From assembly GCA_044892505.1 (NCBI GenBank), contig CM097883.1:17918001-17982000 (forward strand): a stretch of 64,000 nucleotides of DNA, given 5' to 3'. This document shows positions 9,133 to 63,314 of the stretch, one piece after another. The position numbers were made by a program, and so were the translations under genes. The DNA is from Schmidtea nova (Eukaryota). The stretch's first letter is position 1, and the number at the start of each line of letters is the position of its first letter. The notes beneath the pieces are model-generated. The model worked only from the letters and a program-made list of their open reading frames with translations. It did not search any database and had not been told where the DNA came from.

Positions 9133-9750
9133 ATGTCTTCCAGGCGGTTAAACAAGACGAGACCGAGGAATAGATTAATAACACGACGAGGGCCAGAGCG
9201 AGGGTTCCGAGATATCCCAGGTGTTTCCGAGGAAGTACGGGCTGAGATTTTCAGACACGCCCGCCATTGGAAAAGTGAGTTTAAATGAACCGCTCCGTTC
9301 GAGATGATGGACTGCTCAATGATTAATATTAGATGGGAAGGAGACGCCCAATGGCCAGATATCGTAGGCGGCCGTAGAACTCACCAGACCAAGGGGTTTA
9401 TCAAATTCTTGAGCGAGGAGGGATTTCCTAGATGGATCCTCATACTGAAACCACTCGATATTCGAGAATTAAGGCGTCTCGGATACATTCTCCTCGATAC
9501 GTCCCGGAACATTCGGACCGGAGAACGGATGGGCTTTACGAATTTGCCCTGCGAGTTTTTGGATGACTGACAAACAAGGTCGAAGTGGGCTCGACAGATA
9601 CAGTGGAACGACGTATTTATTTACAAAGAAGCCTTATGTTGGAAACCAAACCTGGTATTTTACCTCAAAAATGGAGCCTTGCGAGATGACAGTGACTTCC
9701 TCCAAGATTGGATCATGGAACCGTTGGTAACCAAGCTCAAATCCTCATGA
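9133..9750 (+). pseudogene. ORF-A family copy 1 (unknown protein, two in-frame TGA)
   Basis: Single frame from ATG 9133, directly after a TTTTCAG acceptor, to TGA 9750, with stops at 9286 and 9568. Aligns by eye with 60370-60789 and 35466-35888. Confidence 0.55.
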
Positions 9751-10019: not shown

Positions 10020-10313
10020 ATGAATATCCTTGAGAACGACATCGCTACAGACAAGAGGAGTCAATTAGTTCGTCGAGTAAAATTGCTTGAGCGGCAAGGA
10101 TCCGAATTGGAAGAGATAAAACGAACGTGGTTTCACCTAAGTGCTGTGAAAGAAATATTAAAAACGAAGGACCGCACGCAGCGCGCATTGGACGCACAGT
10201 CAGTGGAATTGGCAGCCACTAGGGTTGAATTGAACAGATGTTTGAGAGCAGTCACGATGGAATTCGTATCTACGCACTTGAAAAACCAAATACGAGCGAG
10301 TACGTTCGACTGA
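10020..10313 (+). CDS. ORF-B family copy 1, 97-aa coiled-coil-like protein
   Basis: Open ORF homologous to 63075-63314 (WF...VELxAT..+L.+CL..VT..F..T.LK..IR..T). The stop overlaps the next ATG (TGATG). Confidence 0.55.
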   Translation: MNILENDIATDKRSQLVRRVKLLERQGSELEEIKRTWFHLSAVKEILKTKDRTQRALDAQSVELAATRVELNRCLRAVTMEFVSTHLKNQIRASTFD

Positions 10314-16278: not shown

Positions 16279-17136
16279 GTACAGAAGTGGACATTGGTCG
16301 TTGCGCTGCTTTATAAAACGAAAAGTTGAAAAGATTTGTTACATCTCTAGATGCTACCTTGAATACAAATGAGAAATATTAACTGATAGCAAACTAAATT
16401 CTGTAAATCAGTGCTTCTCAAACTTCTTAATGTGGCGGTTCGGCTGAACTTTTTACATGGCGCTAGGGACGGGTGCACCATTTTCTCTGTACTGATGTGG
16501 TGGTCGAACGAGCGCCGAAGGTGCTAGTGTGTAGCAAGCCTTTTTGGACAAGTGGGATGAGTCCAGGTTGTCAACAATTTGTGGTGTATTGGGCATAAGA
16601 TTTGTCTCATTTTTTGCTATTTGTACTAGCACAATTTTCGAAAAAGCCGAAGCCCTTAATTGTTTTTTGTTCATTTACGATCGTCTTCAAGTCGCAGTAA
16701 AATGTTTTAATGATAACAGTAATAATCGTCTTGATTTCACCTATTTTAAAATAGATATTGTTACAATAAATATATTTTTTCTTTTCTTGGTGCCTTTTGC
16801 GGACCAGCAGCTGATGGTCCAGGACCGACACCGGTCAGCGGACCGCAACTCCGAGAAGCGCTAGAGTAAATGATTACAATTGTCAACCGTGAGAATATAA
16901 CACTATAATTCCTATAATTATGAAAATTCCCTTAGGAATATGAAACCAAGCCACCAAAATGTTAAAGAACATGGAAGACGATATTCAATTGAAATGAAAT
17001 ACTTTCAGCATTGAAAAATAGAAAATTAGCAAAATATTTTTCTATGATAAAATGTCAAACGATGTCAAATGTTAAGATCAGAGATGCCGGTGATATTGCC
17101 ATAAATGCTGACTCCAAATGAAGCTGTAAATGTTGA
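16279..17136 (+). repeat. About 860-bp dispersed repeat, copy 1
   Basis: Near-identical to 23902-24762. Contains TTTTACA|TGGCGCTAGGGACGGG (LTR-end/PBS-like) at 16451-16473. Confidence 0.9.
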
Positions 17137-23700: not shown

Positions 23701-23901
23701 GTACTTATTGTATTTTCAACATTTATTTAGTAGGATGTGGTACCAGCGTTGTTTCCCGTGTTTCCAAAAAGTAATGAAACGGACTTGATATTGAAAATCA
23801 AGAGATTACACTGTAGGTAACCGAAACACGAATCCCATATCAACAATTTTCTGTTTCTATCAGCAACCATCATTAACAAAAATAATATTTACAATAACTG
23901 A

Positions 23902-24762
23902 GTACAGAAGTGGACATTGGTCGTTGCGCTGCTTTATACAGCGAAAAGTGGGAAAAGTTTTGTTACATCTCTAGATGCTACCTTGAATACAAATGAGAAA
24001 TATTAACTGATAGCAAACTAAATTCAGTAAATCAGTGCTTCTCAAACTTCTTAATGTGGCGGTTCGGCTGAAAGTTTTATATGGCGCTAGGGACGGGTGC
24101 TCCATTTTCTCTGTACTGATGTGGTGGTCGAACGAGCGCCGAAGGTGCTAGTGTGTAGCAAGCATTTTAGGACAAGTGGGATGAGTCCAGGTTGCCAACA
24201 ATTTGTGGTGTATTGGGCATAAGATTTGTCTCATTTTTTGCTATTTGTACTAGCACATTTTTCGAAAAAGCCGAAGCCCTTAATTGTTTTTTGTTCATTT
24301 ACGATCGTCTTCAAGTCGAAGTAAAATGTTTTAATGATGACAGTAATAATCGTTTTGATTTCACCTATTTTAAAATAGATATTGTTACAATAAATATATA
24401 TTTTTTCTTTTCTTGGTGCCTTTTGCGGACCAGCAGCTGATGGTCCAGGACCGACACCGGTCAGCGGACCGCAACTCCGAGAAGCGCTAGAGTAAATGAT
24501 TACAATTGTCAACCGTGAGAATATAACACTATAATTCCTATAATTATGAAAATTCCCTTAGGAATATGAAACCAAGCCACCGAAATGTTAAAGAACATGG
24601 AAGACGATATTCAATTGAGATGAAATACTTTCAGCATTGAAAAATAGAAAATTAGCAAAATATATTTCTATGATAAAATGTCAAACGATGTCAAACGTTA
24701 AGACCAGAGAGGCCGGTGATATTGCCATAAATGCTGACTCCAGATGAAGCTGTAAATGTTGA
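23902..24762 (+). repeat. About 860-bp dispersed repeat, copy 2
   Basis: Near-identical to 16279-17136. Confidence 0.9.
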
Positions 24763-27700
24763 CGAAGTATGCAGACACAAGTAGACGATATTTAATGAAA
24801 TCGGTTGGCAGTGCTCTTACAATCAAAGCCAATTACATTTTTAATATTTTTATTAAAGTGATGAATTTACAAAACGTATTTAGTGTAAATAACTTACGAA
24901 AGATACAAATAAAACGACCAGATTCACTGGATTCCTGCCGACCAGCTTTCAAGACATTTAAGAACAGCGTTTTACACTGTATTGAGAGAACGGCCAGAAA
25001 GTATTAAAAATTGGGGCGATTCGAGCCAGACGAAAGTGGTCTACTACTTTGTTTGCTATTGAATTTAAAACTTATTCTTTTGATTAGGACTGGACAGAAT
25101 ATATCTGTTTACACCTTGAATTACTGAAAACTAAAACAATACTCGGATAATGCCGATCCTTTCCAACTCTCGCCCGATTCCTTTAAACAAACAAATGATA
25201 CTTCTTCTATTTGCTTCCTTGATAATCTTTCTTTATAACATCTGTTTCTAACATTTTCTCTGCTAACGTTTCTCTTTCTTTCTCTCCTGCTTCTTTTTCT
25301 GATAAACGCTCAACTATTTTAAGCAGTTTTTTTCTCCAAGGCCTCTTAAATTAATTTTATCGTTTTCAACTTTGCGAGTCTAATATCTTCTGTATCCTTT
25401 CTATTTTTTGCTCTGATTTAAATATATCAATTGAGGGGGTTACAAACTATTTAATTTCTAGGAAAATTACTAAAAATAACAAAATCTATTTATAGCAATT
25501 TTTCATTATTTTCATTAGTATATTAGTTATTCTCTATTTTCTTTATTCTAGCTTTAATTTATTTTCATCCTTCAGGTTAAGAGCCTGGCCCTAACACAAC
25601 AACCATAAAACAACCAAAGATTTAAGTTAAATTAGTATATAAACCTTAAAAATTTCAATGTGGGTAACATTCTTAAAATTTCTCCTAAAACGTAAAAATC
25701 TGGCATTTGTATTAAGTATTTTAGAATTTATTAATTCTATTTTGATCTTGCATACTTTCGATTACTACAACATCTTACACTCAGTTGCGACTAAGCAGGA
25801 AATTGATAACCAACAACATATGACACAAGTTATTGTCCCATCAACAAATGATTGACGTGAAGGTAACAGGACTCATGTAGAACACAAATGTCAATGCTCT
25901 CATAAATCAAAACAAATGGCGGATTCGAAATGATATCCAGGAAACTTTTAATTCATAAAGTTTCAGTGATTAAATGAACTGTTAAAATCATAAAAAAAGA
26001 AACTTCTAAGTGAAAAGAACTTGCCAATTCAAAACTGCAAGGGTGAAATGTCACATACTGAGGGAAATACTACCCGTATTCTCTCTTCGAGTTTCAGAGA
26101 ATTTTCAATTATATTAATATTTTGAATTTAAAGTTCGTGCCTTCTTAAAATTTTGGAATTTTTAGATTAATTGATGTGGTTATTTACAATTCCCAATTTT
26201 TTAAGCCTTATTTTATACTTGTCCAATTGGTTCATGGCATGGGCGAAATGCCACATACTTTTGAGAAAACTGACCGTCTTCTCTGTACTAAAGTTTCACG
26301 GAATTGTTAATTGAATATAATGGGTTTTATCTTTCAATCATAATGTTGTGTACACATGAATATATTTGTAAAAAATTTAAATTTTAAACAATTCTTTTTA
26401 TTGTTTAAAATATTTTTAAAAAAATATATTTTAAAATTTAAAAATTATTGTCAATTTTTTGTATTAATCAATTTATTTTTTATTAGATATTGTAATGTTG
26501 AATTGAAAGCACCTTAATATAAGAATGGTGTTCTCTAAATATGCTGTGTAGAATATAATAGGCGTTTTTTGTTTATAATAATAGTAATATAAGCAAAATT
26601 ATCAAAATAATAATTGCTTTTTTACAGTCATCTCATTTTCCCGCCGCTTTAGGTAAAAAGGAGTAACCTATAGTATATTGGTACCTTTATATTTTTGATA
26701 CTATTATTTTTTTAATTAGTGTATCTAATTTGCTATAATATATCGCATCGCTTTTTATATAAGAAGCTTCATCAACTGATTGGTTATGTTGGAGAGAGGA
26801 AAAAGTAAGATTTTCAAAATATGTAAATTGTTGTTGCTGGTGTTCAGGTTCGAAATATGGCTGAAATGTAGGTTGTTGAAGAAGAAGAACTCATATCAGT
26901 AACGATATATCTCTCTGAATTGTAACCCAAATTCGTTTGAAAGATTCTGAGAATATGGGTTGAGTTTTAATTTTTAATTTTTATACTTTTTATAGCGTTG
27001 ACAAAATTAAGGTTGCAGCTAATTTACATGTCGATCTTTNNNNNNNNNNNNNNNNNNNNNNNNNNNNNNNNNNNNNNNNNNNNNNNNNNNNNNNNNNNNN
27101 NNNNNNNNNNNNNNNNNNNNNNNNNNNNNNNNNNNNNNNNNNNNNNNNNNNNNNNNNNNNNNNNNNNNNNNNNNNNNNNNNNNNNNNNNNNNNNNNNGCC
27201 AATTAGATACTTAAAGTGCCATATAAACAAAATTAACGATGCCTTGCGTCTAAAATATTGAAATGCACCTGCTAGTGATTTTAAAAATAAAAAGTAATTT
27301 TTTAATTAGCTGTTAGAAGGCTTTAATTAATTAACAGAGTTTTTTTGAATATCTGATGTTGACAGGGAGTCTGTCAAATTATAAATGGCGTTTTTCATAA
27401 TTAAATAGTTGCAATGTTGCAATTTGGATTAAATTTTACATTCGGCTAAAAACAAAATCGCCTCCTAATGGAATTACAAGATTTATTCTAATGACAAGAT
27501 ACACGGATATCCATGACCGTTTTGTACCACAATGTTCCGGTAGAATTATGCCAAGGCCAGTATACTTTCAAAATACATTTTGTATTTTAGTTATATTTTA
27601 TTAATAAAAACCGAATTCTCAATTTTTATTTTGAACATAGGTAGTGTATCGAATTTTTATTACTACCTTTTTCTTTTAAATCTGTCTAGTGTAATTATTT

Positions 27701-29979: not shown

Positions 29980-30418
29980 CTAGCTTACCCATCGTACGTT
30001 GTTGCCATCTCAGAAGAAATTAAATTAAAAGAAACTCGTTATGATAACATTCAATTTACATTGTGTAATTATTATTGAAACATATTGAAAACATTTCAAA
30101 GTACCGTTTTAATTCTATTTATTTATTTGAATGCTTGTGGATACACGATATTTTTTGTTTTTCCGTCTGGTGCGTACACGAATAAATCAGAAGATTTTCC
30201 GACGCATTAGATGACCACATACAGTTGTCCATGTGAGAAGCAAGGATTCTCCAAATATAGTTCACACACTTGCAGTGATTGTGCATGTGCTTGTCGCAGC
30301 GAAAACTGTGGGTGGCTGGTCCAATATTTTAAAAAATGTTTTGCCAGAAACCTTTACATGAGTGTACTTAAGAACTTCTTAAAGTTTCAGGGCGTTCGGA
30401 CAGACAGACATTCATTTG

Positions 30419-30492
<74 letters not shown>
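29980..30492 (-). mobile_element. Possible non-autonomous Helitron-like element
   Basis: The minus strand ends GGGTAAGCTAG|T. The other end has GACAGACAGAC followed by (TA)n, an arrangement common in non-autonomous Helitrons. The 3' hairpin and 5' TC are not clear. Confidence 0.35.
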
Positions 30493-30495
<3 letters not shown>

Positions 30496-30754
30496 TTTAA
30501 AACCATTGTTTGTTTTTTAGTCATGTTGCAACTGTACTTAATTACACAAAATGTGAAGAATATATTTAAATTTGAATAAGAATATATTTAAATTTGAAAA
30601 AGGAAAAATTGGACTTCATCATCACAACGATGGTTTCATTTTCAGATAATTCAATTGTCAATATTTCTTTATTATCCTGATTATTTTTCATTTTATAATA
30701 TATTTCTATTTTTTCCATTGTAATCTCGAATACCTTTTTTAGCGCTATAAGTGC

Positions 30755-31097
30755 CTATCTAACAGTTTCGTCAGTGGGAAATTCAGCAAAATGATGCAAC
30801 AGTGTCCTACCATTATGATTTCTCGCATTAATATCTGATTTATAATTACCTTTCAATGCTCGAATGAAGTTAGTTTCACAACCTAGCTCAGATATTACAG
30901 AAATAATTTGAAATACTTCTAAGTCAATTACCGGATTTAAGGTTCTCTCGGCTCCACAATAAAAAAATGCTATTTCATCTTTACTTTCAAAAAATAACTT
31001 TTTATGAATAAAAACTTTGACTGCAGAGTAAGTAGTCGTTTCATTCTCTAAGTCTACATATATGCAGACAAACATCAAGAATAATGCTGATGTGTTC
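30755..31097 (-). pseudogene. Ankyrin-repeat pseudogene headed by a spliced-leader sequence
   Basis: KSDINARNHNGRTLLHHFA is an ankyrin repeat. The frame stops at 30755 and is out of phase with the leader ATG. Confidence 0.65.
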
Positions 31098-34710: not shown

Positions 34711-35465
34711 ATTTCTTAGCAACATTTAGTATAAAATTTTATTAATATTTAAAATTTTTAATAAAAATATTAATTGAACGTAAATTTAAATATCATAACA
34801 TGATGTTATATTAGTACCTCGGAATGAGGATATTAAATTTTCAATGTTGCTGATAAACATGTCATTGTTTTTATAGAATAATTTTTAATATTGAAACACG
34901 TGGATAGTTTTCTTTTAATAGCCGATTTTAATTTACTAAACACTATTGGATATAAAAAAAGGATTTACGATTGTTAGAAGATGGACGAAAAATAAAAATT
35001 CAAACATTATACAATAGGAAGCAATAAATTCAGAATAAATATTAACATACATTAATTATTCGAGAGCAACACTTTGATTTATTGGACAATAATATTCATT
35101 GTGTGATCAATTCATTGACATTGACAATTTATTCTTGTGTTACCATTTTAATAGTTTGGTGACTTATCTTTTGAGTTATTTCATGTAATGACAATTTATT
35201 TTATTTTTATGTGAGAATAGTTTGTTTTTTTGTGTGATTCTAATTATTTTGTGATTTAAATAATATTATGTAATCTTGACGATCATCTTTGTAATTATTA
35301 TGTGATTTTGATTATTTTATATAATTAATTTTTGCATTTTTATGTTTAACGATATAAACATGACAATGATTTAATTGATGGAAAAGCGCAAAGTTAACCC
35401 GGTCAGGATCCCCATACAAATATATGTGTATATTTACTTTATAAATCAAATAAAGCTTGGTGGAT

Positions 35466-35888
35466 CTACAAGCCCTTGAGGATGGGCTTTTCCCGTAATC
35501 CCGTGATCGAGAACTGTCTCATCTGTCGCTCCTTAGATATCCGGAGAGGTCGACTAGTGTCATCCTGATTTGCTATAATTCTGACTGTTGGATGTATCCC
35601 AAGTAAATTACACGTGACGGCCTCTGCTGCTTGTCTTTTAATATTGGCCAGCCGCTGCCTCCCCCCCCGGTATAGAACTTCGTCATGGGGATTCCTACAT
35701 ATCGAGAAGGGACATACCAATCAGAATTCGTGACGCCACTTGCGTATTTGCATATCCAGAGTGCGCAGAAGTGAAGCCGGTAGATCTTTGAGCGTCCTCA
35801 TTTGCTTCCGTTGTTGCATATTGTACTTCTATTTAGCCACAATCTGCCTAGTGTATTCATAGTCTCTGGTTTCTTGTGAGCTTTCCAT
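35466..35888 (-). pseudogene. ORF-A family copy 2 (stops and frameshifts)
   Basis: MESSQETRD...RTLKDLPASLLRTLDMQIRKWRHEF...RGG/SGWPI...QRPSRVIYLGYIQQSEL.../TSRPLR...LREKPILKGL* aligns with 60370-60789. Confidence 0.7.
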
Positions 35889-37254: not shown

Positions 37255-37862
37255 CAATTAATAATTAATTAATATTTTTGAATTTATAACACTTCATGAT
37301 CTCACATAAATTTAAAATTATTTATTTTTTCAGTTGCCATGTGATATGGTCTTTCGTCTTAAAAATATGGATTTTTGCAATTTTAATTATACTAACTATC
37401 ATGTTAACCAATGAGATTGCATGTTCTATATTTCTTCAGTCGAACTATTACCTTTTTATAAAAAGTGTCACGCGAAACAGCAATTTTCTCCCAAACAATT
37501 TACAAATGTTTTCCTGCCGTTCAGTGTATCGATAGCATAATTTTGAAGGAATATTTTTACTTACTGGGATTCATGAGATTTCCAATGTACAATAATTTTA
37601 TGGATTACTGGTTCAATTGATACACGGCTCTGTTGCCTTTTTGTCCATACATCGACACGTATCATATCATGGACTTTCGTAAGGTTATCTTTAAAATTTA
37701 ATTGTGTTATTAACCAAGGGTATTTATAATTCATTGATAATTCACGAGCGATATGGATATTCTTGTTATAGTTTAATTTTACTGGGGGTTCAAAATAGTT
37801 CAGCAGATTATTTATTTCTATCTCTTCTGTTATGTCGCAATGATAGATCATGGGTACATGTT

Positions 37863-37922
<60 letters not shown>

Positions 37923-41400: not shown

Positions 41401-43852
41401 TGGTCTCATATCTTTTTAAATTGTTTTATTTATTACTTTAACAGACTTTAGATTGTTTAAATTTCTTTCGCTTCTTCCTAATTCTTCTATATTTTTTTCA
41501 AGATTGATTGTTGTCTTAGCCCAACACATTCAAAACTCAATACTTGGTTGTGTATCAGTGAAGAAACCATGACTTCAATCACCTCGAAATATTGCTGTAA
41601 ATAGAGTTTAACTCGCATTTGAAAACCCTTCTAGAATAATTGTCTTGGTTTTTCCAGCTTTATGACTGAGTAGTGTAAATAGCCAGACACTTCTCAACAT
41701 ATTCTTTAGTTTCCGGAGGAATTGTAACACTAGATTTAGCAATAAAACTGCTGATTTCCCGACTGTGATCATTATTAATATTGAAATCATTAAAATTGAC
41801 AAAATTCTCCATAAAGGCAGACAATTCGTTGTCTATTAAAAAGGTTTTCCATAAATTATGAGTCATTATCAATTTTTAAAAAAAATTATTATATATGGAA
41901 AGTAACCATCTAATCTCTCAGACTTTGGACGGTTACTTTACTGTCCACTATAAATATTATATATGAGTCATTCCATGAAATCCGGTCTACCCTGTGAGCT
42001 TTAAATAAACTTGGGAAAAGGGGATGGGTGAGAGAATTTTTGTCTAGACACACCATGGTGTGTCTAATTATAATGCCATGGTATTTATTACAAATAATTT
42101 CAAATTTTTTTAATTTTACACAACTCTAATTTTGCCATTTTACAAATTTAAACAAAAAAACTAACTAAATTTAAATTTTAATCAAAATCACAAAAACTTA
42201 CAATACACAAAATTAATCAACTCTCAGTTCAGCTTTATTATAAATTTTCAGAGTCTAGTACAGAATACTTGATCAATTCATCAATATTTTTACGTGTTTC
42301 AATGCGATAAATTAAAATTCACTGATTTGGAGTTCTTTAAATGTCTAGGAAAATTTTCATTAAAATTATTTCCATAATAATTTCAATATATTCATGATTC
42401 TGAGCCTTAACAGTAACAATTTTTCGGACTGATGATTGTAATTAAATAAATCGAGTCTGGATTTAAAGTTGCTAATTACCATATATAAAATATTGAATTT
42501 AGAGACTTCAGACATTTTCCCATCTATAAACATAATTTGATTAGGTTTTAAGCTATTTGAAAGACTGGAGTTTGACAATCAATAGAAATTAGAGTTTGCC
42601 ACTATAGGTCAATAATTTGAATGAGTTCCGGTATTATGGAAGTAATGCCAAATTGATATAAAATAATTGGACTTATTGAGAATAGAACTGACTGTCGTGA
42701 TCTGAAGACATACAAATAGTCGAATAACCACGTCTGACGGATCAGTAGCATTTGAGTAATTCATATTCTGAAACTGCTTCAGTCGATTCACACCTTCATT
42801 TTTTATGTTTATATTATGTTGGTAACATTGTATGATCTATTTCTATGGTAACAATATAACTATTGTTTAATCAGTAGTCACCCGTCATACAGAAACGTTG
42901 GTAATGTAGTTATTGGGCGAAATACTCGCAAAAGTGAGCACTGTTAGCAGAATTATAATTGATCGAGTAATTCTTATGGGTTCAAGAGCTATCAATAGAA
43001 GATGTGCTCGATTTGATATTAGGTCTTGGATATTTTTGAGCATTTTGTCGAGTTTCGATAAACCCACATTGATCGACCCGTGGCTTTCATCGATCGTTAA
43101 TAAAACGGCACCGATATCCACAACTCCTTTCAGGCTGCTTCCAAACACTTCAAACAAATCCAGGATCTCCATATGTGCCAGAGATCGGTCTTGATGCAAA
43201 AAGAGGACAAGTTCCAATCCGGTTTTAAATATCTTTGAGTCTTGAATTCTTAATTGTCAGGAATGGAATCGTAATTAAAAGAGCGATAAAAGAAGAAGAT
43301 ATTGTCATTTACCCGGCTTTTTTGCGGTCTTTTCCACGTTGCTTTGATCGAAAATCATCTGTTGTAGAAATTCGACACAGTTACTCTTCGCAAAAATCCA
43401 AATTTCGCAATTTTCAGTATGAGAAGCTAAGAAATTCTTTCCTATAACGCTTGAATTTTTCCAACGTTTTTTTTCGAATCTTCTTATAATCGTAAGCGAT
43501 AACATTTTTTATTAACATTTTAAAGATTTCAATCGAGGTGTAAATTTAATATCTTAAAAGATTATTATGTACTCTATTTGTCAATTCAATTTCTAAAATT
43601 AAAATTTCAAAAATAATGTTGAATACAGATCGCTTCCTACGCGATCCTACTTAGAATATTTCACTCAACTGTAATCTCAGTGCCACTAGGATGAACAGTA
43701 AGACTATTATTTACCAAGTGCTTTTATTGATTTTTTGGTACATAATTTTATTTTCAATATTGCTAATTTTCTCAAATTCTCGACAACGACTTCCCAACTG
43801 AAAATTTCGAGTTGTTATGAATTGGAATATGTTTTATGATTGTAATATATCC

Positions 43853-44863
43853 AGTCTCCAGTGAAGTAGTTATTTACATATTGCAGTTTATAATGAACGT
43901 CTGCAGCGCAAATATGAACAGCAATGGGAACAAAGGTCACCGACATCTTCAACATGCTGCATGCGCATATGTACACACGCACGCACTCATACACTGAATA
44001 TGACTACTCACACCAGACTCACAACAGTGAGTCATGTTAATGAAGGATTGTCATTTTCTTAGAATATGGCTACTCGGAGAGCTTACATTCCTTCAGAAAG
44101 GCATTATTTAAGGATGTTACTTTCGTGGAAAAAGTCAGAGTGAAACTGCTGCATTGACTGGCCATCACAAAGGAACTATTAACTACTTCCTGAGGAAGCA
44201 CCGCCAGGAGCAGAAACATGTCAACAGGTAACGTTCAGGACGCCCTAAACTTCTGAGCTGAAACAGCTTGTGGTGGCTCATCGTCGGTTCCCCCTGTCCA
44301 AGTTAGAGTCCACATTTAACACTCGTGGAACTGGCCCTCTAGTGAAGTGCAGCAATCACATGACGTCAGTGAAACACCGTGCCATTCTAGAAAATGAGCT
44401 TGTTCCCTTTCTTCCAGAAATTGAGGGGCTCATTTTCCAACAGGATAATGCACCAATCCAAACTTCACATTATGAAGGAATTCTTTCTGCAGCACAGCAT
44501 CAACGTTTTGGATTGAGTTCTACAAAGCCCTGATCTGAATCCTAATGAGTTTCTGTAGGATGTCCTTGGTAGACGAGTTCACAAAAAGATTTCCATTGCC
44601 CGTAACGCCTCCGAACTGGAAACGTATCTACATGAAGAATGGTCACACATTTCCCCTGATTTCCTGGCAAAAGTGGTCGACACAATGCCTAAACGAGTGC
44701 GACTTGTTATCCAGATGAAAGGTAATATAACGAAGTACTAACTCTCTCAGCACTACAGACATTCAGTATTCGTGTGTGTTTGTGGCATTTGTTGCCATTA
44801 CTGTTCATTATAAAATACAATATGTAAATAACTGCCAGACTGGAGACTTTTGGTAGGCCGGGG
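43853..44863 (+). mobile_element. Internally deleted Tc1-like element
   Basis: Imperfect inverted repeats at 43853-43898 and 44803-44848, with the right end ...GGCCGGGG|TA. Transposase remnants lie at 44066-44741, including LIFQQDNAPI, SPDLNPNE and MPKRVRLVIQMKGNITKY*. Confidence 0.8.
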
Positions 44864-47800
44864 TATGTGAATTAGTCTTGTTCATGTTTCTGATTTATGT
44901 TTTATTGAAATTTTTAGTTGAATAAAATACAGTGTGGTTTTTACGAGTTAGCTTTTTAGGTTTCAACGAGTTCATGTCTTTCACCTGATGAATCTTCGCG
45001 TCAGATTAAACATATTAGGCGGTTCTACTCTGACTCCTCGTACCCCTTATATTTAAATAAAATCACTAACACCTAACAGAACAATTCATTGATGGATCAA
45101 AAAAAAATTATAAGTTGTCATTAATTTGCACATTTCTTTCGGACAATTCTAATGTAAAGGCAGATAGCTCAAAGAGTAATCACCTTTTTGGAGCGTTAAT
45201 TTTGAAAATAATTATTTCTTCTTTAAACTTTGTCTCTTTCAATTTCAGTATTCAAGTTATGATCTAATTCAAGTAATTGATCAAGTAATTCATATTATGA
45301 TTTTTGTTTTTTTTGTGATTTTGTAATTTAAATAATGTAATTTGTATATTCTGAGCTTAATCTATTTTCATATTATTTCTTTAATGATACATCATGACCG
45401 AAATTTTGATGATACAACGAATGAAATATTCTGTTTTTTTGAATGATAGCGAATGATANNNNNNNNNNNNNNNNNNNNNNNNNNNNNNNNNNNNNNNNNN
45501 NNNNNNNNNNNNNNNNNNNNNNNNNNNNNNNNNNNNNNNNNNNNNNNNNNNNNNNNNNNNNNNNNNNNNNNNNNNNNNNNNNNNNNNNNNNNNNNNNNNN
45601 NNNNNNNNNNNNTAATAAAAATACACACCTTGGGTGCTCTATAAAATTTGTTTAGCCTCTTGGGTGCAATATATAAAAATTATATATTTTTTATATTATA
45701 TAATTAATAATTAATAATTAATAATGTAATATTTAATTTCTTCGAGGGGTTTAATTCAAGACTAAATTTTTAAATATTTTTCCTAAATCACAATTATTAA
45801 ATCAAATAAATACATATGAACATAATACAATAATCTGTAATATATAATATTTCTTTTGGGAGGAGTTATCCTTTTAATGACTAAAATTTAAAAAATATTT
45901 TCCAAAAATCCTTCTTTTCATCAAATAAATATAAAAAACATGAAAATAAAATAAATGTAAAATCAACTGATATCCCATAAATAGTAACAACAGATGATCA
46001 ATAAAATTCTTGAAGTTAAATTAATTGTCACAAATTAGAATTGTCATCGATGCAAAGGCTATATTTATTGCTTCTAAAATTGCATGCAGTTTTTTATTGT
46101 GATGATGTTTATTCTTATTTTGTTAATTTTTATTAAAGTAGCCACATTTTGGTTTACTTCTAACAATTCGCATGAGTCGTCATAATTAGCTTCCAAACCT
46201 TTTGTAAATGGCTTTTTAATTAATATGTAATCGGTGGTTAGAACTATTTTACCACCTGTTTCGGAGTTTTCAACTATTAGTTCCACCGAGGGGTGAGAGT
46301 CCCATATTTCACTATATGACATCTGGTCACTTTATAATGTTTAATTAAAACTGGCTTATATTATTACTAAAGATTAAATATGATGATAAACACTTGAACC
46401 TATCAAAACTACTTATCTTAATAAGTAACTAATCCTTGTATTTTTCAAAGTATTACTGACGTACGGTGCTATTTATGTATCGAATATTTTAAGTTCAAAA
46501 TAATTTATTATGCTGACAAAAATTGGGGAACTTGCTGTATACTTTAAACAAGAAAATTTCAAATTGGGGAAGAACTGGAAACGAAATGTGATTATACGTA
46601 TATAATTGAAGTCGAAAGGAAAAAGAATATGAAATCATTAGAATTATTTGTAAGGAAAAACGAGGATATTGAGAACTTTGTGTATTCTAAGGAGCAATCA
46701 ATATTATAAAAGGAAATGTAATAATATGAAAGAAAAAGTCAAACAAATCTACTTGGAAAGTTACAAAGGAAGACAAAAGAACGAGAACTGCAAATGAAAT
46801 CGCTTGGTCAGCATTGAAATGCCGAATAAAAATTTTAACTACTCTGACAATAGGAAGAACTAAATATTGGTGGATTTTTGGACAGTTCTTACATGGAATT
46901 TCTATGGTAACGAATTTGCTAAGTAGTCATTAGATAGAATTCTCTCGCCTCCTCCACCGTTCATGTGTCAGTTTTATCTCCTTTTCCTACCCTTTTACAG
47001 ACAACCCCACCAATCGCTAGAGTGCGCGCCTATGCGATGATTAATTCGAGGCAACACGCATGCATTTTCCAATAAAAATTATGTAACTACTTTTTGTAAA
47101 AATTTTTTAAGATTATTGACGAGACATTCTCAGACAATTAAATCATCGAATCAGGTTATTTTTACTTGCTGCCTGTGTGTATGTTTACGTCGTATACTGA
47201 TTAAATTACTTATTTAAAACAAAGGTAATTTTTATTTTATTTTACTTCATTTTTTATTTTAAAATCAATTATGATATTTTCGTATGTAAATATATACCAT
47301 AATTGTTTTCTTTTATTCAACCGATATGATGGGTTTTAGTTTTGCTACGATAAACTTAGCAATGGGTATTTAATTTACTAATTATAAATTAATCCTATTT
47401 AATTTTATGTGGATGCTTGCAACTTCATGATTCCATTTAAAATTGATTTAATATTTCTTCGAAATATCATATATTACTTTGTTTTACTTGTATCATCGTA
47501 TCATAGCGGATTTTAAATAAAATTATTGTGGTGCTTGTGTATTTTCGACGCATTTAAAGAAATCAGAAATTTAAATTCTGTCAACCCTGCCATGTTAAAT
47601 ACTGAAAGTTATTTTTCTGAAGGAATTACAATAAAAATTTATTGAAAAGAAAATATCTACTAAAATTATATAAGTAAAAATATTTGTGTATTAAAGGAAT
47701 AAATAAATGTCCTAAAATACAAATAGAAAGGTGTGGATGGCAGTCTTATATTTAATGAATATCTTCAATATATTGTTGTTTACATAAAAAATGGTAACAA

Positions 47801-48980: not shown

Positions 48981-49660
48981 TTTTACGTAAAATTTTATTA
49001 TTGATTTTTTAATAAATTTTATTTTAATTTTTTTATTTATATACTTTAATTATAATTTAATTTTACGTCTTCCATATTTATACTATAAAAATTAAGACAA
49101 TTAACTATAGAATTCTTTAAATTTTTCTATTCTATTTTTTTGATAATTTGCTATGATTATGTTTTTTCGTGTTTACTTCTTGTTCTTGTTCAATTAAAAT
49201 TTTACTTGTGTTTCTAATTACTTTTGGTTATTTGGTGTTTGCTCAGATATTTGATAATACGTCTTATGCGGCCTAGGTATGATATGTTATCACTCGCTGT
49301 CAAATCAATTAAATTCAGTTTTTTACGTAAAATTTTATTATTTATTTTTAAATAAATTTTATTTTAATTTTTTTATTTATATACTTTAATTATAATTTAA
49401 TTTTACGTCTTCCATATTTATACTTTAAAAATTAAGACAATTAACTATAGAATTCTTTAAATTTTTCTATTCTATTTTTTTGATAATTTGCTATGATTAT
49501 GTTTTTTCGTGTTTACTTCTTGTTCTTGTTCAATTAAAATTTTACTTGTGTTTCTAATTACTTTTGGTTATTTGGTGTTTGCTCAGATATTTGATAATAC
49601 GTCTTATGCGGCCTAGGTATGATATGTTATCACTCGCTGTCAAATCAATTGAATTCAGTT
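48981..49660. repeat. Near-identical tandem duplication, 2 x 340 bp
   Basis: TTTTACGTAAAATTTTATTATT starts at both 48981 and 49321, and the units match to their ends. Confidence 0.9.
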
Positions 49661-50192
49661 TTTGCCTAACAATATCAATGACGAAATGGTGAAAAATGAG
49701 AAAAGTTTTTATTACTAGTCTTCACACTCATGAATGAAAGAATATAGCAACATTGCTCTACGATTTATTTCACCTAAAATGACAGCACGTGTTCAACCCA
49801 TGGATTTGGGAATTATAAGATCATTTGAATAAACAACTGAAAAAAATGTTAATACGTTACTTTAGATAATACGTTAATAAATACGTTACTTAGAAGATCC
49901 CGATTCAAATTCTTGTTTTATTACTTTAAATAGGTATTTCGATACTGAATATTCAACAGTATCTTTTATACGTTCAAACTAGAAATTATATAATTTGTAC
50001 ACACACGCTGTGGTAAATTTTAATTTGCTATTGGTTGGACATCACGCTGCTGACCTTGTAAAAATACTAACGCAATTTTTAAGAATTGATTATATTAAAG
50101 GAAAATTAACTCTTAGTAAATTATTTTTTTAGAATTAATATATACAGTTGATTTGACTTGTCTATGGAAGGACAGAGCAAAAGGAATACAGA

Positions 50193-54849: not shown

Positions 54850-55047
54850 TTGTTAAAAAAGGTGTTAATGGAACGAATTTTTGGAAGCTTCGATTTAGAA
54901 TTTATGGATCAAATTATGTCAATGGATAGGCCGACAAGAAAGGCTAAAGATGATCATTCAATACAGAATAATAATGATAATAACGCTACGCATATGCAAG
55001 GAAGTTCAGAGAATCATTACAATTATTTCAATTATTTGGCACATTGA
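54850..55047 (+). CDS. Short ORF running into an inverted-repeat arm
   Basis: Open frame (first ATG 54868) that reads NDNNATHMQGSSENHYNYFN through the left arm and stops 4 codons later. Confidence 0.3.
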   Translation: MLKKVLMERIFGSFDLEFMDQIMSMDRPTRKAKDDHSIQNNNDNNATHMQGSSENHYNYFNYLAH

Positions 55048-55361
55048 AGTTAGTCAAATCTAATCCATACCATTTGAAATGTTCTAGATCCGGAAATTGT
55101 TGGCTAGAATGATGCAAAGCACGCAATTTAGAAATCATTTTAGTAGAATCCAAGGCAGCATTGACAGCCACCTGCTTGGGAGTAACTAACAAGGCTTTAG
55201 CGAATCCATCTGGCCTGTAATCTGCATTCATGTTCATTGGCATATTGAAATTAGCATAATTAGCATCAATATTCATCGACATAACATCCCTATTGCTGTC
55301 ATTGAAATAATTGTAATGATTCTCTGAACTTCCTTGCATATGCGTAGCGTTATTATCATTA
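54972..55361. repeat. Perfect 61-bp inverted repeat with 268-bp spacer
   Basis: 54972-55032 is the exact reverse complement of 55301-55361. Confidence 0.95.
55028..55339 (-). CDS. ORF/exon spanning the right arm and spacer (103 aa, unknown)
   Basis: Open across the whole spacer. The frame stays open upstream of the ATG to about 55400. Confidence 0.35.
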   Translation of the reverse strand: MQGSSENHYNYFNDSNRDVMSMNIDANYANFNMPMNMNADYRPDGFAKALLVTPKQVAVNAALDSTKMISKLRALHHSSQQFPDLEHFKWYGLDLTNFNVPNN

Positions 55362-57030: not shown

Positions 57031-58294
57031 ATTTCAGACTCGCCCCACAATCTATCACAGCAATCAAGCCCCACCTTTAACTATTTAATTTTTAATTTAA
57101 TTAATTTTTAAATATTTTATTAAGCGGGCGCGACCAACTTACATTTTTAAAATGTCTCGCTTTTCGATTATTGAAAATAAAACTAAACTTAACTTCTTCG
57201 GACAAAAATTACAGATGTAAATATAGGTTAAACGATCAGATTTTTTAAAAATTTTAGTTTATTTTGTTTAAATCAATTTCCTTTTCTGGTCCTCTCTAAA
57301 TGATAGTTATTTTATAACTTGTTACATTTACTTTTAAAACCGCAAATTATCTCAATTTTTAGAAAAATTGATAATCAAACAATATTGGAAGAGAAAATGA
57401 TGAAACGGTTCGACAGAATTGGGTTAAAAAATATAATAAACCTTCGCCAACTAGACTAAAAATCTACAGATAACGTGATAAATTTGAAACACTGGGCCTA
57501 TCAATAATGCACCGAAGTGTGGACGATTAGTTAATGTTAACAATAATGAAAAAGAGTTGGTTGATTATTTATCCAAAGTCCGCAAAAATTTAAAAAATAA
57601 TTTCAATCGAGTGTTTGACTGTGTTTTATCAGATTGACGCCAAATACAAACAATAAGTGCACTAAACACGGAAATATCAGAAATATATAATGTTTAATAA
57701 AAAGACGCAAAACCTGAAATGCACAGCAAGAAAAATTAAATTTGATAAAATTTGCATAAAAACCATCAATTGGAACCATAACCAGATAAATAACAAAAAT
57801 CCATCTTGGTTGTCTAGATGGTAAAATTAATTAAATAAAAATAAAGATAATCAAGAAAGCAAAAAAATAAAACCGATAATCATTATCTGAAAAAGAAAAG
57901 AAAACAATTGGTTAGAAAGATCAAATTGAAATGGGCAGATCGACAATGATTGGTCGAAAATTAACCGCCAAGAGTATAAATAACAGTGCAAGACACAGTG
58001 AGAGGTCAATTTTTTCATTTTACTTAACCGAAATTTATTATAATCATCTTTTGAGCCGAATTTTGATGAAATAGGGTAGTCAAAGAAAGTTTAAGCAGCA
58101 AAGTCAAAAAAGCAAATACAAGTGGGCGCAAAAGTAAAATAAAAAAAGACATAGTTGCGCTGAAAGAGGAAACATGACGCTCAGGTGTTGGTATTAGATA
58201 CACTTCTAATATCAGAAGGATTCTGACAGGCTGCAGACCCGAAAGGACCTTAATTTATATTCTTTGTAAAATAAATAAATAAATGTTCTATGAC

Positions 58295-58376
<82 letters not shown>

Positions 58377-60369
58377 ATGCTTTCTTTATATATTCCTACA
58401 AAGTTTAATTATTACAAACATTATTATAAAACTACTGAAAATAGTTTGTTTAAATATTCGTAAAGTGATTTTCAAATTTAGAAATGACAGGCATTTATTT
58501 CATTTTCAGCAAAACGAATGACAATGCTTTATTGCAGATATCCAAGTTTAGCAAAATCTATCAACGTTTACGTGATACTGTGAAATTTAAGTCCAATTTC
58601 ATTTACTGTTAGAACATACAATTTTACAAATATTGAAGAAAATCCAGAAGCATGCCGAAGGATTGCTTTAAAAGAACATATATCAAGTTTTGAACAATTT
58701 GCCCAGATGATCTTTAACGCTTTGCTCCTAGCAAGTTTACAGTTTTAAAACCTAATCATTGTACATTTTGTCTCAAGACTATCACTCAATCTATTTGAAA
58801 CGCTAAGTCTATCTCAGAATTCAGGAGAAGGAAAATACTAAGAAAGAAGTGACAAGTCAATTGGAAAGAATTTCGTATTAGAGTGAACAGAATCTTTTTA
58901 AGATCGAAATAATTTCATCAAATAAACTTTGCGGAGAACAGCTTAACACTTAATTTATTATTATATTAATGTTGGGCCAGCCGAATACCTAAAAAATACG
59001 AAAAATAGGGGTATTACTTGTAAATTTTATATTATTTTTTTTGTATTTCTTGTTCTAGATCTCCCGGTTTGGCTATTTTCAAAAAATTCGGACTATTTTA
59101 TTCCCATGGGTAATTTGTTATTTTCCTAATCTATTTGCTTATAGCTTTCTTTAGGTTTTTATGTTCAATTGGATTATTTTACAATTATTTTGTTTTAATT
59201 ATAAGTACTTATTACCAAATAATTAACTGAAAAACTGGATCACCAAGCGAGAAAAATCAGAATATGAAATAAAATCAGTTAAAGTTAATTAGAAATAATG
59301 AGACTGACTTTGAAGGGCGGCCTGATACCGACCCGAAAGTCATAAAATCAGCATTACATTTTGAGACTTAGAACGATTAAACTGATTCTAATTTTTCACG
59401 ATTTAAGAAACACTTTTTGACAAATTCTCTATGGAAATTCAGAGTAATTTTTATTTTGTTTGAATTATTATGATGAGGTTATAATGCTCCATGGTTTCGT
59501 TTTGAATATGTATTTTATAAACCTATTATTTTCTGATTTATTCGATGATCATATTTCCATAAACATATAGATAAAGCTTCCTCAGTAGCTCACGCTGTGA
59601 GGGCGCAAGCCGTCTACGTGGGACTTTTTAGCTCCACGGGATGGTGAGTGGGTTAATTTTTTTAGAAAACTATTTGAATCGGTTTAGGGGTTGCACATAT
59701 GAGGTCGTAAGCACAGTTTTCATTGCAATCTTAAGTGATTTGAATTTGAGTAAATGTTACGAGGGTAGCTTTTGAACAAGCCTCAGGTGTACACATATTT
59801 TATTGCACCGACGATTTTTGCAGTATCACAAAGGAGATAGTAAACACAAATTTAAACATACGTTTCGTGTAAGGGTCAAATTGAGGAAACGGTCTCGAGC
59901 AAGTTTCAGGGGTCCATATAATTTAATCGCAAGTTGAGCAAGATGCCTGATGATTTTTAGCAGTGTTGTATAGGAGGGATTCTCAAAAATGTTTTACAAA
60001 TGTTTTACAAACGAGATTCGGGGAGTTTAAAGCGAGCAGAGACTATTGGTCGGAGAATTTTTATCTATGATTAAATACCCCTTCGGGAAGTCCCTACACA
60101 TCGTTAGAAACGATTTTGGTTGAGTTGATAAATGCGCAGCGTAGTGGGAGGAATTTTAAGCAGTCATGAAGGGTAATAGAAGTGAGTAGTGAATTATACA
60201 GACAAATTGCATAGAAATTTAAGGAGGACATAATTTTTTTGATACATGTTACAGGGTCATACGAAAGGAGGACTATGCAGTTCTGGGAAATTTTCAGACC
60301 AATGAGAAGCGGAAAGTTTAACATAATTTTTTTTCTTTTCTTTAAGCAGATGGAATTCGAAAAAAAACA

Positions 60370-60789
60370 ATGCAGCGACGGGCACCTAGTCAGGCCGATG
60401 TCTCGCCAAGTCAGCCTACTAGAAGTCTGAAAAACCTACCAGCTCCGATTTTGAGAACCTTGAATGCACAGATGTACAAGTGGCGTCAGGCGTTCAGAAA
60501 AAGATACCCATCCTTCATCTGGGAAACCAGGGGTGGCCCCGGTTGGCCGATTTCGACAGACCGACATTACTCCTCCACGTTTGGAAGATTCCTAATTCTG
60601 GTCAAAGAACACAAGCAGCGGCCGCAGATAGTAATTTACTGGGGGCATATCCCTCAAAGCGAACTCGCCGAATTGAGGTTGAATCTACTCACGTCCCCGC
60701 GTCCACTCAGAAAAGCTCAAGAAGAAAGATTGCAGACATTCTCCGAACTGCGCCTGAAACCCATCAATGACGGCCTCCACATCGCGTAA
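60370..60789 (+). CDS. ORF-A family copy 3, intact 139 aa
   Basis: Uninterrupted ORF after a pyrimidine-rich TAAGCAG acceptor (60349), with AATAAA downstream. Homologous to the copies at 9133 and 35466. Confidence 0.65.
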   Translation: MQRRAPSQADVSPSQPTRSLKNLPAPILRTLNAQMYKWRQAFRKRYPSFIWETRGGPGWPISTDRHYSSTFGRFLILVKEHKQRPQIVIYWGHIPQSELAELRLNLLTSPRPLRKAQEERLQTFSELRLKPINDGLHIA

Positions 60790-61334
60790 ATATTTGCCAG
60801 GTACAAGATCCCAGTGTTTGATCGTATAATGTATAAGTTTAAAAATAAATGTGTTCTCCTTTCGTTTGAATTTCATTTTGGAATAAAAAATGTCGCTAGA
60901 TATAGACGTAGAGATGTTGGTTTGATACTAAATTATAATCCATTATTATTTAGAGATTAAATGTAAAAATGTCCAATTCCTAATTCGTTTATAGAATGCG
61001 TAATGAATTGTTAATTTTTTATCATTATCATTTTTATTATTGTTGTTATCTTTATTGTTGTTATTATCATTATTATGGTTACCGTTGTGATCATGGTGTG
61101 TGTCATGTTGGACACCGGAAACCCCCCCCCCCAATTATTAGTGTGATTATAATTATTTTAACAGTTGGCCATATTTATTTTAATTGTAAATTTGAATTTG
61201 GCTTGCTATAGCAAATTGATATAGTAAGCCGAATTACAAATATAGAATATCGGTTATTTTTAATATCGGCTTAGAAATATTACCAATTAAAGCTTTTCAA
61301 TTACAGTTCATTCAATTATACTCGTTCAATACTA

Positions 61335-62610
61335 CGTGGTGCGCCCAATAAGTCGTGAGACTAAAATAGAAAGACTTAAGATATCAACACAAAACTTTGT
61401 ATTTAGAACAAGCATGGTAAATAGGCATCATTTCTCAAAATAATTTCCTTCTGCACTTACACAATTTTCCCAGCGAATAACGAGGTTTTCGAAGGCGGTT
61501 TTGAAGAATTCTGGAGGCTTTTCTCCCAGAAAACACTCCACGGCTGCTCTCAAATCATGTTTGTTGGCAAGCGCCTGGCCTCGCAGATGCTTTTTAAGAT
61601 GGTTAAATAGGAAAAAATCGGAGGGAGCCAAATCGGGGCTGTATAGTGGATGGGGAAGCAAATTGAGCCTGCAACGCTCAATTTTGGCCATGGAAACGCC
61701 GCTGGTGTGGATGGGAGCATTATCGTGTAAAAAATAGAGATCACACACTCTGCTCTTGCGTCGTGCCTTCCTTGCTTACTGCACGATGTTGGAGTAGTAA
61801 GAACTATTGATCTTCATGCTGGATTCAGCAAAGTCAGTCGGAATAATGCCATTGGCGTCCCAAAACACCGTTAGCATGAGAGCCTTTCGGTGGCAAGTTG
61901 AGGACCGCATTTTCAGTGAGCTGCTTTCTCCTGGCAGTTTCCATTCTTGAGACTCTCTTTTAGATTCGGGGACATAAAGGGACAACGGTGTCTCGTCCAC
62001 AGTGATGATATTATCAATGAAACGGTCTCCAACATTGGTCCTGATCTGCAGATTCTCCAAGCAGCATTCCAAGCGTCGTTGTCGCATTTCCAACGTTAAG
62101 AAGCGTGGCACAAAACGGGAACATAGTTTTCGAAAACCACTTTCAGTGAGGAGAGTATGCACAGTGCCTTTGCTCACATTTAGACGGGTTGTGAGCTCTC
62201 TCGTTCTTTTTCTCTCGTTTTGCACGCTTTTGCGTTATTTTTTCATCAATTTCTGAGGGTCTTCCAGATCTTTCTTCGTCCACCACGGACGTTCTACCAC
62301 TCTGAAAGTAATTGAACCAACGATAAATTGTTGCTGTGGATGGGCACTCTTGTTGGTAAACAACTTTCAGTTCAGAAAGAACCTCTTCTCTATTTTTTCC
62401 TTTCAGAAAGAGAAAGCGAATAACGCTACGGTATTGAATAGTTTCCAGAGGCATTTTTCGAATGTTCGCAAAAATATACGTAAACAATAATGGATTATTA
62501 AAACAATACATTTTCTTTACCTATATATGTTGAAGTTTAAATATGTCTGTATCAATTTTTTTACTATTATTATTTCTATATTAGTCTCACGATTTATTGG
62601 GCGCACCACG
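61335..62610 (-). mobile_element. Full-length decayed mariner (1276 bp)
   Basis: 30-bp TIRs CGTGGTGCGCCCAATAA(G/A)TCGTGAGACTAA with one mismatch, and TA on both sides. Confidence 0.94.
61428..62454 (-). pseudogene. Mariner transposase pseudogene (one frameshift, one premature stop)
   Basis: MPLETIQYRSV..., then a frameshift near 62230, FVPRFL, DETPL, TAA at 61776, HDNAPIH and YSPDLAPSD. Confidence 0.92.
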
Positions 62611-62612
62611 TA

Positions 62613-62700
62613 GCTTGCTCTATTAAAGCTTTTCCAATTATAGCTTGCTCAATTACAGCTTGTTCAATTATAACTTATTCAATTATAGCTTGTTCAATTC
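62613..62700. repeat. About 15-bp minisatellite (CAATTATAGCTTGTT-like), split by the mariner
   Basis: The same degenerate unit occurs at about 61290-61332 on the other side of the element. Confidence 0.75.
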
Positions 62701-62758
62701 TTAATCCCCTATAACTTACGTGAGTAGACTTATTGAAATTTTTGATCTCAATAAAAAT

Positions 62759-63074: not shown

Positions 63075-63314
63075 ATGAAGACACGAATGACCCGAATAGA
63101 AGCGCAAATTCAATATCTAAGGCAGAGCTGGTTCGCACCTGCACGTATGAAGGATCAAATAGCTCGCACCGAACGCTCCTAACGAGTGGCGGAGGAAATC
63201 AAAGTCGAGTTGGAAGCGACTAAAATTGATTTACGGAAATGCCTCCATTACGTGACAAAATCTTTCATAGAAACCGAACTGAAGTCGCACATCAGGCCCA
63301 TCACGTATCAATAG
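63075..63314 (+). pseudogene. ORF-B family copy 2 (one in-frame TAA)
   Basis: MKTRMTRIEAQIQYLRQSWF...*RVAEEIKVELEATKIDLRKCLHYVTKSFIETELKSHIRPITYQ* aligns with 10020-10313. Confidence 0.6.

What the first reader, a model, noticed from the sequence alone, without database searches (positions are those of the whole stretch)
60350..60789. ORF-A: an unrecognised protein family present three times in 64 kb
Copy 3 (intact): RSLKNLPAPILRTLNAQMYKWRQAF…RGGPGWPI…QRPQIVIYWGHIPQSEL…TSPRPLR…LRLKPINDGL. Copy 2 (35466-35888): RTLKDLPASLLRTLDMQIRKWRHEF…GWPI…QRPSRVIYLGYIQQSEL…TSRPLR…LREKPILKGL. Copy 1 (9133-9750) is more distant: HWKSEF…QWP…ELRRLGYILLDTSRNIR. Conserved residues across otherwise diverged copies suggest long-term selection. 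Copies 1 and 3 have a splice acceptor just before the start and AATAAA after the stop, like spliced accessory genes of retroelements. I recognise no known domain, so this is the best candidate here for an undescribed mobile-element-borne system.
Basis: partly seen in the sequence, partly recalled or inferred. Interest (0 to 1): 0.8.

Follow-up and report, generated by a model that had tools for sequence, protein, structure and literature searches.

The report
Orphan two-ORF repeat unit, mostly decayed
ORF-A is a real small basic protein-coding sequence with no detectable relatives anywhere, paired with a coiled-coil ORF-B, but all three loci in this window are partly decayed and carry no mobile-element hallmark, so it looks like relics of an unclassified repeat or orphan gene family, not a working system.

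Summary
The intact 139-aa ORF exists at 60370-60789 (+). Copy 2 (35466-35819) is real but lies on the minus strand and is a pseudogene. Its pieces match ORF-A at 47-56% identity (z 7.6-14), with synonymous sites saturated (pS 0.78) and pN 0.33, which indicates past purifying selection. Copy 1 (9133-9570) has one in-frame stop, and its similarity to ORF-A is not significant alone.

A second ORF, ORF-B, lies downstream of both copy 1 and copy 3 (E 2e-11). It is predicted as a single long helix (pLDDT 95). So the repeated unit is ORF-A followed by ORF-B.

No locus keeps both ORFs intact, and a broken mariner sits between them at copy 3.

- **Relatives:** none in Pfam, PDB, 1.84 billion representative proteins, or viral, prokaryotic and metagenome contigs. 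A control shows the source clade is poorly represented, so this absence is weak for close relatives.
- **Mobile-element hallmarks:** no LTRs, TIRs, reverse transcriptase or transposase belong to the unit.
- **Signals:** AATAAA is common here (3.4/kb). Only copy 3 has a strong acceptor.

Most likely these are decaying relics of an unclassified, non-enzymatic repeat unit. A host orphan-gene cluster is the main rival. Interest is modest.

The parts
60370..60789 (+). ORF-A, copy 3. The only intact copy: 139 aa, pI 11.1, no Cys, GC 0.52, GC3 0.56.
60323..60349 (+). Polypyrimidine tract ending in AG, 20 nt upstream of the ORF-A start. It resembles a splice acceptor (cis or trans); use is not shown.
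   Evidence: strict pattern occurs 0.5 per kb
60844..60849 (+). AATAAA, 55 nt after the ORF-A stop. Weak evidence, because the hexamer occurs 3.4 times per kb.
35466..35819 (-). ORF-A, copy 2. A pseudogene with at least two frame changes, two premature stops and one internal deletion of roughly 17 codons relative to copy 3. No ORF-B was detected beside it.
9133..9570 (+). Probable ORF-A, copy 1. Read in a single frame with one in-frame stop. Homology is weak by sequence and supported by its position upstream of ORF-B.
10020..10313 (+). ORF-B, copy 1. Intact, 97 aa, predicted as one continuous helix (residues 3-96, pLDDT 95), so coiled-coil-like.
63075..63314 (+). ORF-B, copy 3. One in-frame stop. 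It matches ORF-B copy 1 at 31% identity over 74 aa (49% over the last 35).
61284..62701 (-). Mariner-type element lying between ORF-A and ORF-B of copy 3. It is not part of the unit. Its 41-nt TIRs are at 61332-61372 and 62573-62613. Its transposase is split into three ORFs (at least two disruptions).

Best explanation
ORF-A (a small, very basic protein) and ORF-B (a long-helix, coiled-coil-type protein) form a two-ORF unit, on one strand and in one order. The unit has been copied at least two or three times, and its copies diverged for a long time while still under protein-level selection.

The loci in this window are now relics. None keeps both ORFs intact, one lacks ORF-B, and one has a mariner lodged between the two ORFs.

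I read them as decaying copies of an unclassified interspersed repeat, probably an old or non-autonomous mobile element. In that reading its two products are structural rather than enzymatic. ORF-A would be a basic, nucleic-acid-binding protein and ORF-B an oligomerising coiled coil, and any copying enzymes would have been supplied from elsewhere.

Shown here: the ORFs, their synteny, the selection signature, the decay, and the lack of relatives. Inferred: mobility, nucleic-acid binding, oligomerisation and transcription or splicing.
For: - Frame-specific protein similarity between copies 3 and 2, while their DNA is near random: nt identity 57%, pS 0.78, pN 0.33.
- ORF-B is shared downstream of copies 1 and 3 at E 2e-11.
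- Each locus has decayed in a different way.
- A mariner is nested between the ORFs at copy 3.
- Composition resembles the mariners in the window (GC 0.45-0.52, GC3 0.5-0.6) more than host exons (GC 0.37-0.39).
- The copies lie in both orientations within AT-rich, non-coding surroundings.
- The two mariner lineages in the window are about as diverged from each other (54% aa) as ORF-A copies 2 and 3 (52%), so old diverged repeat lineages are normal in this genome.
- ORF-A has pI 11.1. ORF-B is one helix at pLDDT 95.
Against: - No terminal repeats, target-site duplications, poly(A) tails or enzymatic ORFs delimit the unit, so its ends are undefined.
- No two copies are similar at the DNA level, and no young copies are seen.
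- Three diverged copies within 64 kb also fit a local cluster of host paralogues.
- The third copy's homology to ORF-A is only probable.
- The structure model of ORF-A is unreliable (pLDDT 43.7), so the proposed nucleic-acid-binding role rests on composition alone.
Confidence: 0.45

Rival explanations
1. A taxonomically restricted host gene family (an ORF-A/ORF-B gene pair) expanded by old local duplication and inversion. It evolves by birth and death. ORF-A of copy 3 and ORF-B of copy 1 would be the surviving functional genes, possibly expressed from trans-spliced or operon-like transcripts.
For: - Three strongly diverged paralogues lie within 64 kb, about 25 kb apart.
- There is a signature of past purifying selection.
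- An acceptor-like tract lies directly before the start codons of copies 3 and 1.
- There are no mobile-element hallmarks.
- Host exons lie nearby: YTH, LARP1 and TCP-1.
Against: - No locus keeps both ORFs intact.
- An intact 139-codon ORF-A is compatible with neutral decay at the rate seen in its own ORF-B (about 1 break per 80 codons gives P about 0.18; my arithmetic).
- GC content is higher than in the host exons of the window.
- No other sequence is shared between the three loci, so no trace of a larger segmental duplication remains.
Confidence: 0.3
2. Endogenised fragments of an unknown virus. Two small adjacent genes would have been captured in the genome and then duplicated.
For: - Two short adjacent ORFs with no cellular homologue.
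- Composition unlike the host.
- A coiled-coil protein next to a basic protein is a common pairing in virus structural modules (my own knowledge, not tested).
Against: - No hit to any protein in 1.84 billion representatives, which include metagenome and virome predictions.
- No hit in IMG/VR contigs with either ORF.
- No other virus-like gene in the window.
- Three copies that diverged under selection inside one genome are hard to get from a single integration.
Confidence: 0.1
3. ORF-A is the last coding exon of a larger spliced host gene, and ORF-B is an exon of the same or a neighbouring gene. The apparent 'family' would then be exon-level paralogy.
For: An acceptor-like tract lies just upstream, and the reading frame stays open for a few codons upstream of the ATG.
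Against: - The stop codon falls at nearly the same alignment position in copies 2 and 3, and an ATG sits at the aligned start in all three.
- No further shared coding pieces lie within several kb of any copy.
- I built no joined exon model, because no tool predicts an intron here.
Confidence: 0.1
4. Chance ORFs with no biological meaning.
For: Copy 1's similarity to ORF-A is at chance level by itself.
Against: - Copy 2 against copy 3 gives z up to 14, with 0 of 2000 shuffles reaching the observed score.
- ORF-B matches at E 2e-11.
- The similarity is frame-specific.
- The ORFs coincide with GC islands.
Confidence: 0.03

Closest known systems
Non-enzymatic ORF1/Gag-type proteins of retroelements (for example the LINE ORF1p design of coiled coil plus basic RNA-binding part). 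Comparison from my own knowledge.
   Same: A coiled-coil oligomeriser combined with a small basic protein. Multicopy, decaying copies. Composition like other repeats in this genome.
   Different: - Here the two functions sit in two separate ORFs, with the basic one first.
- No RRM, zinc-knuckle or other known domain is present.
- No reverse-transcriptase ORF follows, and there is no poly(A) tail or LTR.
- No sequence similarity to any such protein.
Taxonomically restricted (orphan) gene families, common in fast-evolving invertebrate genomes such as flatworms (for example PMC5495077 on hidden orthologues).
   Same: No detectable homologue outside the source. Short proteins. Local paralogues with pseudogenes.
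   Different: GC-richer than the neighbouring host exons, no locus is fully intact, and one is interrupted by a transposon. Expression is unknown.
Mariner/Tc1 elements of the same window (5637-6674, 13783-14661, 61284-62701)
   Same: Similar GC content and a similar degree of divergence between copies. One lies inside the copy 3 unit.
   Different: ORF-A and ORF-B lie outside the mariner TIRs and share no similarity with the transposases.

Membership tests
LTR retroelement / retrovirus-like element with a spliced accessory gene | Long terminal direct repeats flanking the unit | tested here: not met
   No direct repeats of LTR type around copy 1 or copy 3. The copy 3 unit may run past the end of the window.
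LTR retroelement / retrovirus-like element with a spliced accessory gene | gag/pol (protease, RT, RNase H, integrase) coding sequence in the same element | tested here: not met
   No such ORF or Pfam hit near any copy. Shared coding between the loci is limited to ORF-A and ORF-B.
LTR retroelement / retrovirus-like element with a spliced accessory gene | A splice acceptor in front of the accessory ORF that is actually used | not testable with these tools
   An acceptor-like tract is present at copy 3, a weaker one at copy 1 and none at copy 2. No transcript data are available.
DNA transposon (Tc1/mariner or other TIR element) | Terminal inverted repeats enclosing the ORFs, plus a transposase | tested here: not met
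   The only TIR pair (61332-61372 and 62573-62613) encloses the mariner transposase, not ORF-A or ORF-B.
Non-LTR retrotransposon (LINE) ORF1/ORF2 | ORF2 with endonuclease and RT downstream, and a 3' poly(A) or simple-repeat tail | tested here: not met
   No RT-like ORF downstream of ORF-B at copy 1. The A-rich stretch at 11000-11500 has no domain hit and no counterpart at copy 3.
Processed retrocopy of a host mRNA | Poly(A) tail and target-site duplication at the copy's ends, plus a parent gene | tested here: not met
   No poly(A) tract after any copy. No parent gene was found.
GIY-YIG nuclease domain (a lead from memory, prompted by the hairpin-then-helix pattern) | Match to the family profile, including its conserved Tyr/Gly, Arg and Glu positions | tested here: not met
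   No Pfam hit at E<=10 for ORF-A or any piece. No PDB hit by profile. The model is too poor for fold comparison.
F-box (a lead from memory, prompted by the L-x-x-L-P ... K-W-R pattern near the N-terminus) | Match to the F-box profile over about 45 residues | tested here: not met
   No Pfam hit at E<=10.
Endogenous viral element | Detectable homology to a protein of an exogenous virus | tested here: not met
   Searches gave no hit.

The most novel reading that the evidence does not exclude
ORF-A plus ORF-B are the protein module of a class of mobile or virus-derived element that has not been described. It would be built only of a basic protein and a coiled-coil protein and propagated by borrowed enzymes, with intact, expressed members elsewhere in the source genome.
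Probability: 0.12. Interest if true: 0.6.

Novelty: new member of a known kind. Interest (0 to 1): 0.3.

Why it matters
If the unit is just an unclassified old repeat or an orphan gene cluster, it matters mainly for annotation. It should be masked or labelled, and ORF-A should not be called a functional gene on intactness alone.

It would become interesting only under two conditions. A genome-wide census would have to show many copies with defined ends, or transcript and peptide data would have to show that a lineage-specific basic protein and its coiled-coil partner are expressed together. That would give a concrete handle on how repeat-rich invertebrate genomes generate new protein families.

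Tried and rejected
**Searches that found nothing**
- Pfam on ORF-A, ORF-B and every piece.
- PDB by sequence and by profile.
- Word-index protein search with ORF-A and with ORF-B.
- Full HMMER profile search of 1.84 billion representatives.
- Locus scans of viral, prokaryotic-genome and metagenome contigs with ORF-A, and of viral and metagenome contigs with ORF-B.
- Exact-protein look-ups for ORF-A, the LARP1 ORF and the intact mariner.
- Rfam and tRNA scans, run to help place the window.

**Structure**
- The AlphaFold model of ORF-A was poor (pLDDT 43.7), and its fold search gave only noise (best E 2.8).

**Control**
- The window's LARP1 ORF has a strong Pfam hit but found no close relative by word search. 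The source clade is therefore thinly represented, and 'no relatives' says little about sister species.

**Ideas rejected**
- GIY-YIG and F-box resemblances recalled from memory: no profile support.
- A link between ORF-A and the adjacent mariners: they are independent insertions at different relative positions.
- A large segmental duplication with a period of about 25 kb: nothing else is shared between the loci.

**Not done**
Substitution counts were taken piece by piece and only the counts were summed.
- N runs were left as they are.
- No contig that I would take for human was met.

Full report
**What is there**

The window is AT-rich eukaryotic DNA (about 0.30 GC). It has five N runs, which I left untouched. 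The ORF is a sharp GC island (0.51) in 0.28-0.35 flanks, and the two other claimed copies are GC islands as well.

**Copy 2**

tblastn with ORF-A finds one other place in the window, 35463-35798 on the minus strand, in two reading frames (E about 1e-6).
- Read as it stands, copy 2 is a pseudogene. It has at least two frame changes, two premature stops and an internal deletion of roughly 17 codons.
- Its three pieces, compared separately with ORF-A, score z = 13.6, 14.0 and 7.6 against 2000 shuffles, and none of the shuffles reached the observed score.
- Only the ORF-A frame of the copy 3 region finds copy 2. The overlapping frames and the opposite strand do not.
- At the DNA level the two copies are barely alignable.
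- Over 101 aligned codons, counted piece by piece, amino-acid identity is 52% and nucleotide identity 57%. The proportion of synonymous differences is 0.78 (saturated) and of non-synonymous differences 0.33.

So most of the divergence happened while both lineages were constrained as proteins. dS is saturated, so no reliable ratio can be given.

**Copy 1**

The similarity to ORF-A is not significant by itself:
- BLASTP reports nothing at E<=100.
- Smith-Waterman z is 1.5-1.9.
- A profile built from copies 3 and 2 alone ranks copy 1's main piece third among 1970 unrelated pieces, at E = 2.

What rescues it is position (next section). In the three-way alignment, 86 columns have a residue from all three loci. 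Of these, 15 are identical and 34 are of the same class.

**A second shared ORF**

A six-frame comparison of the three neighbourhoods shows that the ORF at 10020-10313, about 450 bp downstream of copy 1, is related to 63075-63314, downstream of copy 3. Identity is 31% over 74 residues and 49% over the last 35, with E 2e-11. I call it ORF-B.
- It is intact at copy 1 and has one in-frame stop at copy 3.
- It is predicted with high confidence as one continuous helix (residues 3-96, pLDDT 95.2), so it is a coiled-coil-type protein.
- Given 14 candidate pieces in the kilobase upstream of ORF-B at copy 1, the chance that one of them ranks in the top three for the ORF-A profile is about 0.02.

The repeated unit is therefore ORF-A followed by ORF-B on the same strand. 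Copy 2 has no detectable ORF-B.

At copy 3 the two ORFs are separated by a mariner-type element (61284-62701). It has 41-nt inverted repeats and a transposase broken into three ORFs. I compared the stretches on either side of it separately and did not close them up.

**State of the loci**

No locus keeps both ORFs intact.
- Copy 3 has ORF-A intact, ORF-B stopped and a transposon inside.
- Copy 1 has ORF-A stopped and ORF-B intact.
- Copy 2 has ORF-A badly broken and no ORF-B.

At the break density of its own ORF-B (one per 80 codons), an unbroken 139-codon ORF-A has a probability of about 0.18. Its intactness is therefore no evidence of present function (my arithmetic).

**Signals**

AATAAA occurs 3.4 times per kb on this strand. 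One within 60 nt of a stop is expected 18% of the time, and within 250 nt 57%. A strict polypyrimidine-AG pattern occurs 0.5 times per kb and is present 20 nt before the copy 3 start. It is absent before copy 1, copy 2 and either ORF-B. Copy 1 has a weaker TTTTCAG one base before its ATG. This is suggestive of splicing, cis or spliced-leader, but not more. Spliced-leader trans-splicing is known in flatworms (for example PMC8629364, PMC12582326). I could not verify that the window comes from a flatworm.

**What it is not**
- No LTR-like or inverted terminal repeats flank the units.
- No poly(A) tails follow them.
- No RT, integrase or transposase ORF belongs to them.
- Nothing but ORF-A and ORF-B is shared between the loci.

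**Relatives**
- Pfam gives nothing for any piece at E<=10.
- PDB gives nothing by sequence or profile.
- The word-index searches give nothing for ORF-A or ORF-B.
- A profile search of 1.84 billion representative proteins gives no hit at E<=0.001.
- Scans of viral, prokaryotic and metagenome contigs give nothing.

There is an important caveat. The window's own LARP1 gene (LARP1_HEAT 6e-46) found no close relative by word search. None of the window's proteins is on record by exact match. The source species and its near relatives are therefore missing from these collections. The absence shows that the family is not widespread. It does not show that it is unknown to those who annotated this genome or its repeats.

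**Properties**

ORF-A is 16.3 kDa, pI 11.1, without cysteine, and has an Arg/Ser/Pro-rich N-terminus. The AlphaFold model is unreliable (pLDDT 43.7). It hints at a helix, a hairpin and two helices, and the fold search returned only noise. Resemblances to GIY-YIG and F-box motifs that I recalled from memory got no support from any profile.

**Interpretation**

Composition (GC 0.45-0.52, GC3 0.5-0.6) is like the mariners in the window and above the host exons (0.37-0.39). The two mariner lineages here differ from each other about as much (54% aa) as ORF-A copies 2 and 3. Together with the mosaic decay and the nested transposon, this makes relics of an old, unclassified interspersed repeat with two non-enzymatic proteins the best reading (0.45).

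A birth-and-death cluster of a host orphan gene pair is a serious rival (0.30). Three diverged copies within 64 kb and the lack of any mobile-element hallmark fit it well. An endogenised unknown virus (0.10) and exon-level paralogy of a larger gene (0.10) remain possible. Chance is excluded for copies 2 and 3 and for ORF-B.

No link to a virus was found. Still, in case the unit is treated as virus-like, I record a possible slip. Several scripts printed stop-to-stop piece coordinates as sequence identifiers. I also passed piece bounds from the ORF listing to tools as references. Those bounds show where frames end in the broken copies. The consensus line that HMMER printed was not used.

Noticed in passing
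window 16145-17313 and 23795-24832: Two direct copies of a repeat of about 1.1 kb at roughly 90% identity. They flank the single-exon LARP1 gene (18643-20748) about 7.6 kb apart. This could be a pair of LTR-like repeats or a local duplication around a host gene.
   Followed up: no
window 18643-20748 (+): An uninterrupted 701-aa LARP1 ORF with a La domain and the LARP1 HEAT/DM15 region. Word search finds no close relative in the protein collection.
   Followed up: partly
window 5637-6674 (-): An apparently intact 345-aa mariner transposase ORF. It is 54% identical to the broken mariner at 61284-62701.
   Followed up: partly
window 13783-14661 (+): A Tc1-like element fragment: an HTH ORF followed by a DDE_3 ORF.
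   Followed up: no
window 7790-8220 (-), 55028-55339 (-), 30755-31078 (-): Host-like exons: a YTH domain, a TCP-1/cpn60 chaperonin segment and a weak ankyrin hit. Copy 1 lies about 1 kb from the YTH exon on the opposite strand. Whether it sits in an intron of that gene could not be settled.
   Followed up: partly
window 49089-49386 and 49429-49721: A tandem duplication with a period of about 340 bp at 97-100% identity.
   Followed up: no
window 43821-43994 and 44710-44871: Inverted, protein-level similar segments at the two ends of a 950-bp GC island (43851-44800). This may be a small degraded element with inverted ends.
   Followed up: no
window 8931-8995: A near-perfect 32-nt palindrome (97% complementary) just upstream of copy 1, preceded by an 11-nt AT-rich tandem array.
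   Followed up: no
window 13022-13110, 30411-30518, 37857-37919, 58270-58393: Long (TA)n microsatellites recur across the window.
   Followed up: no
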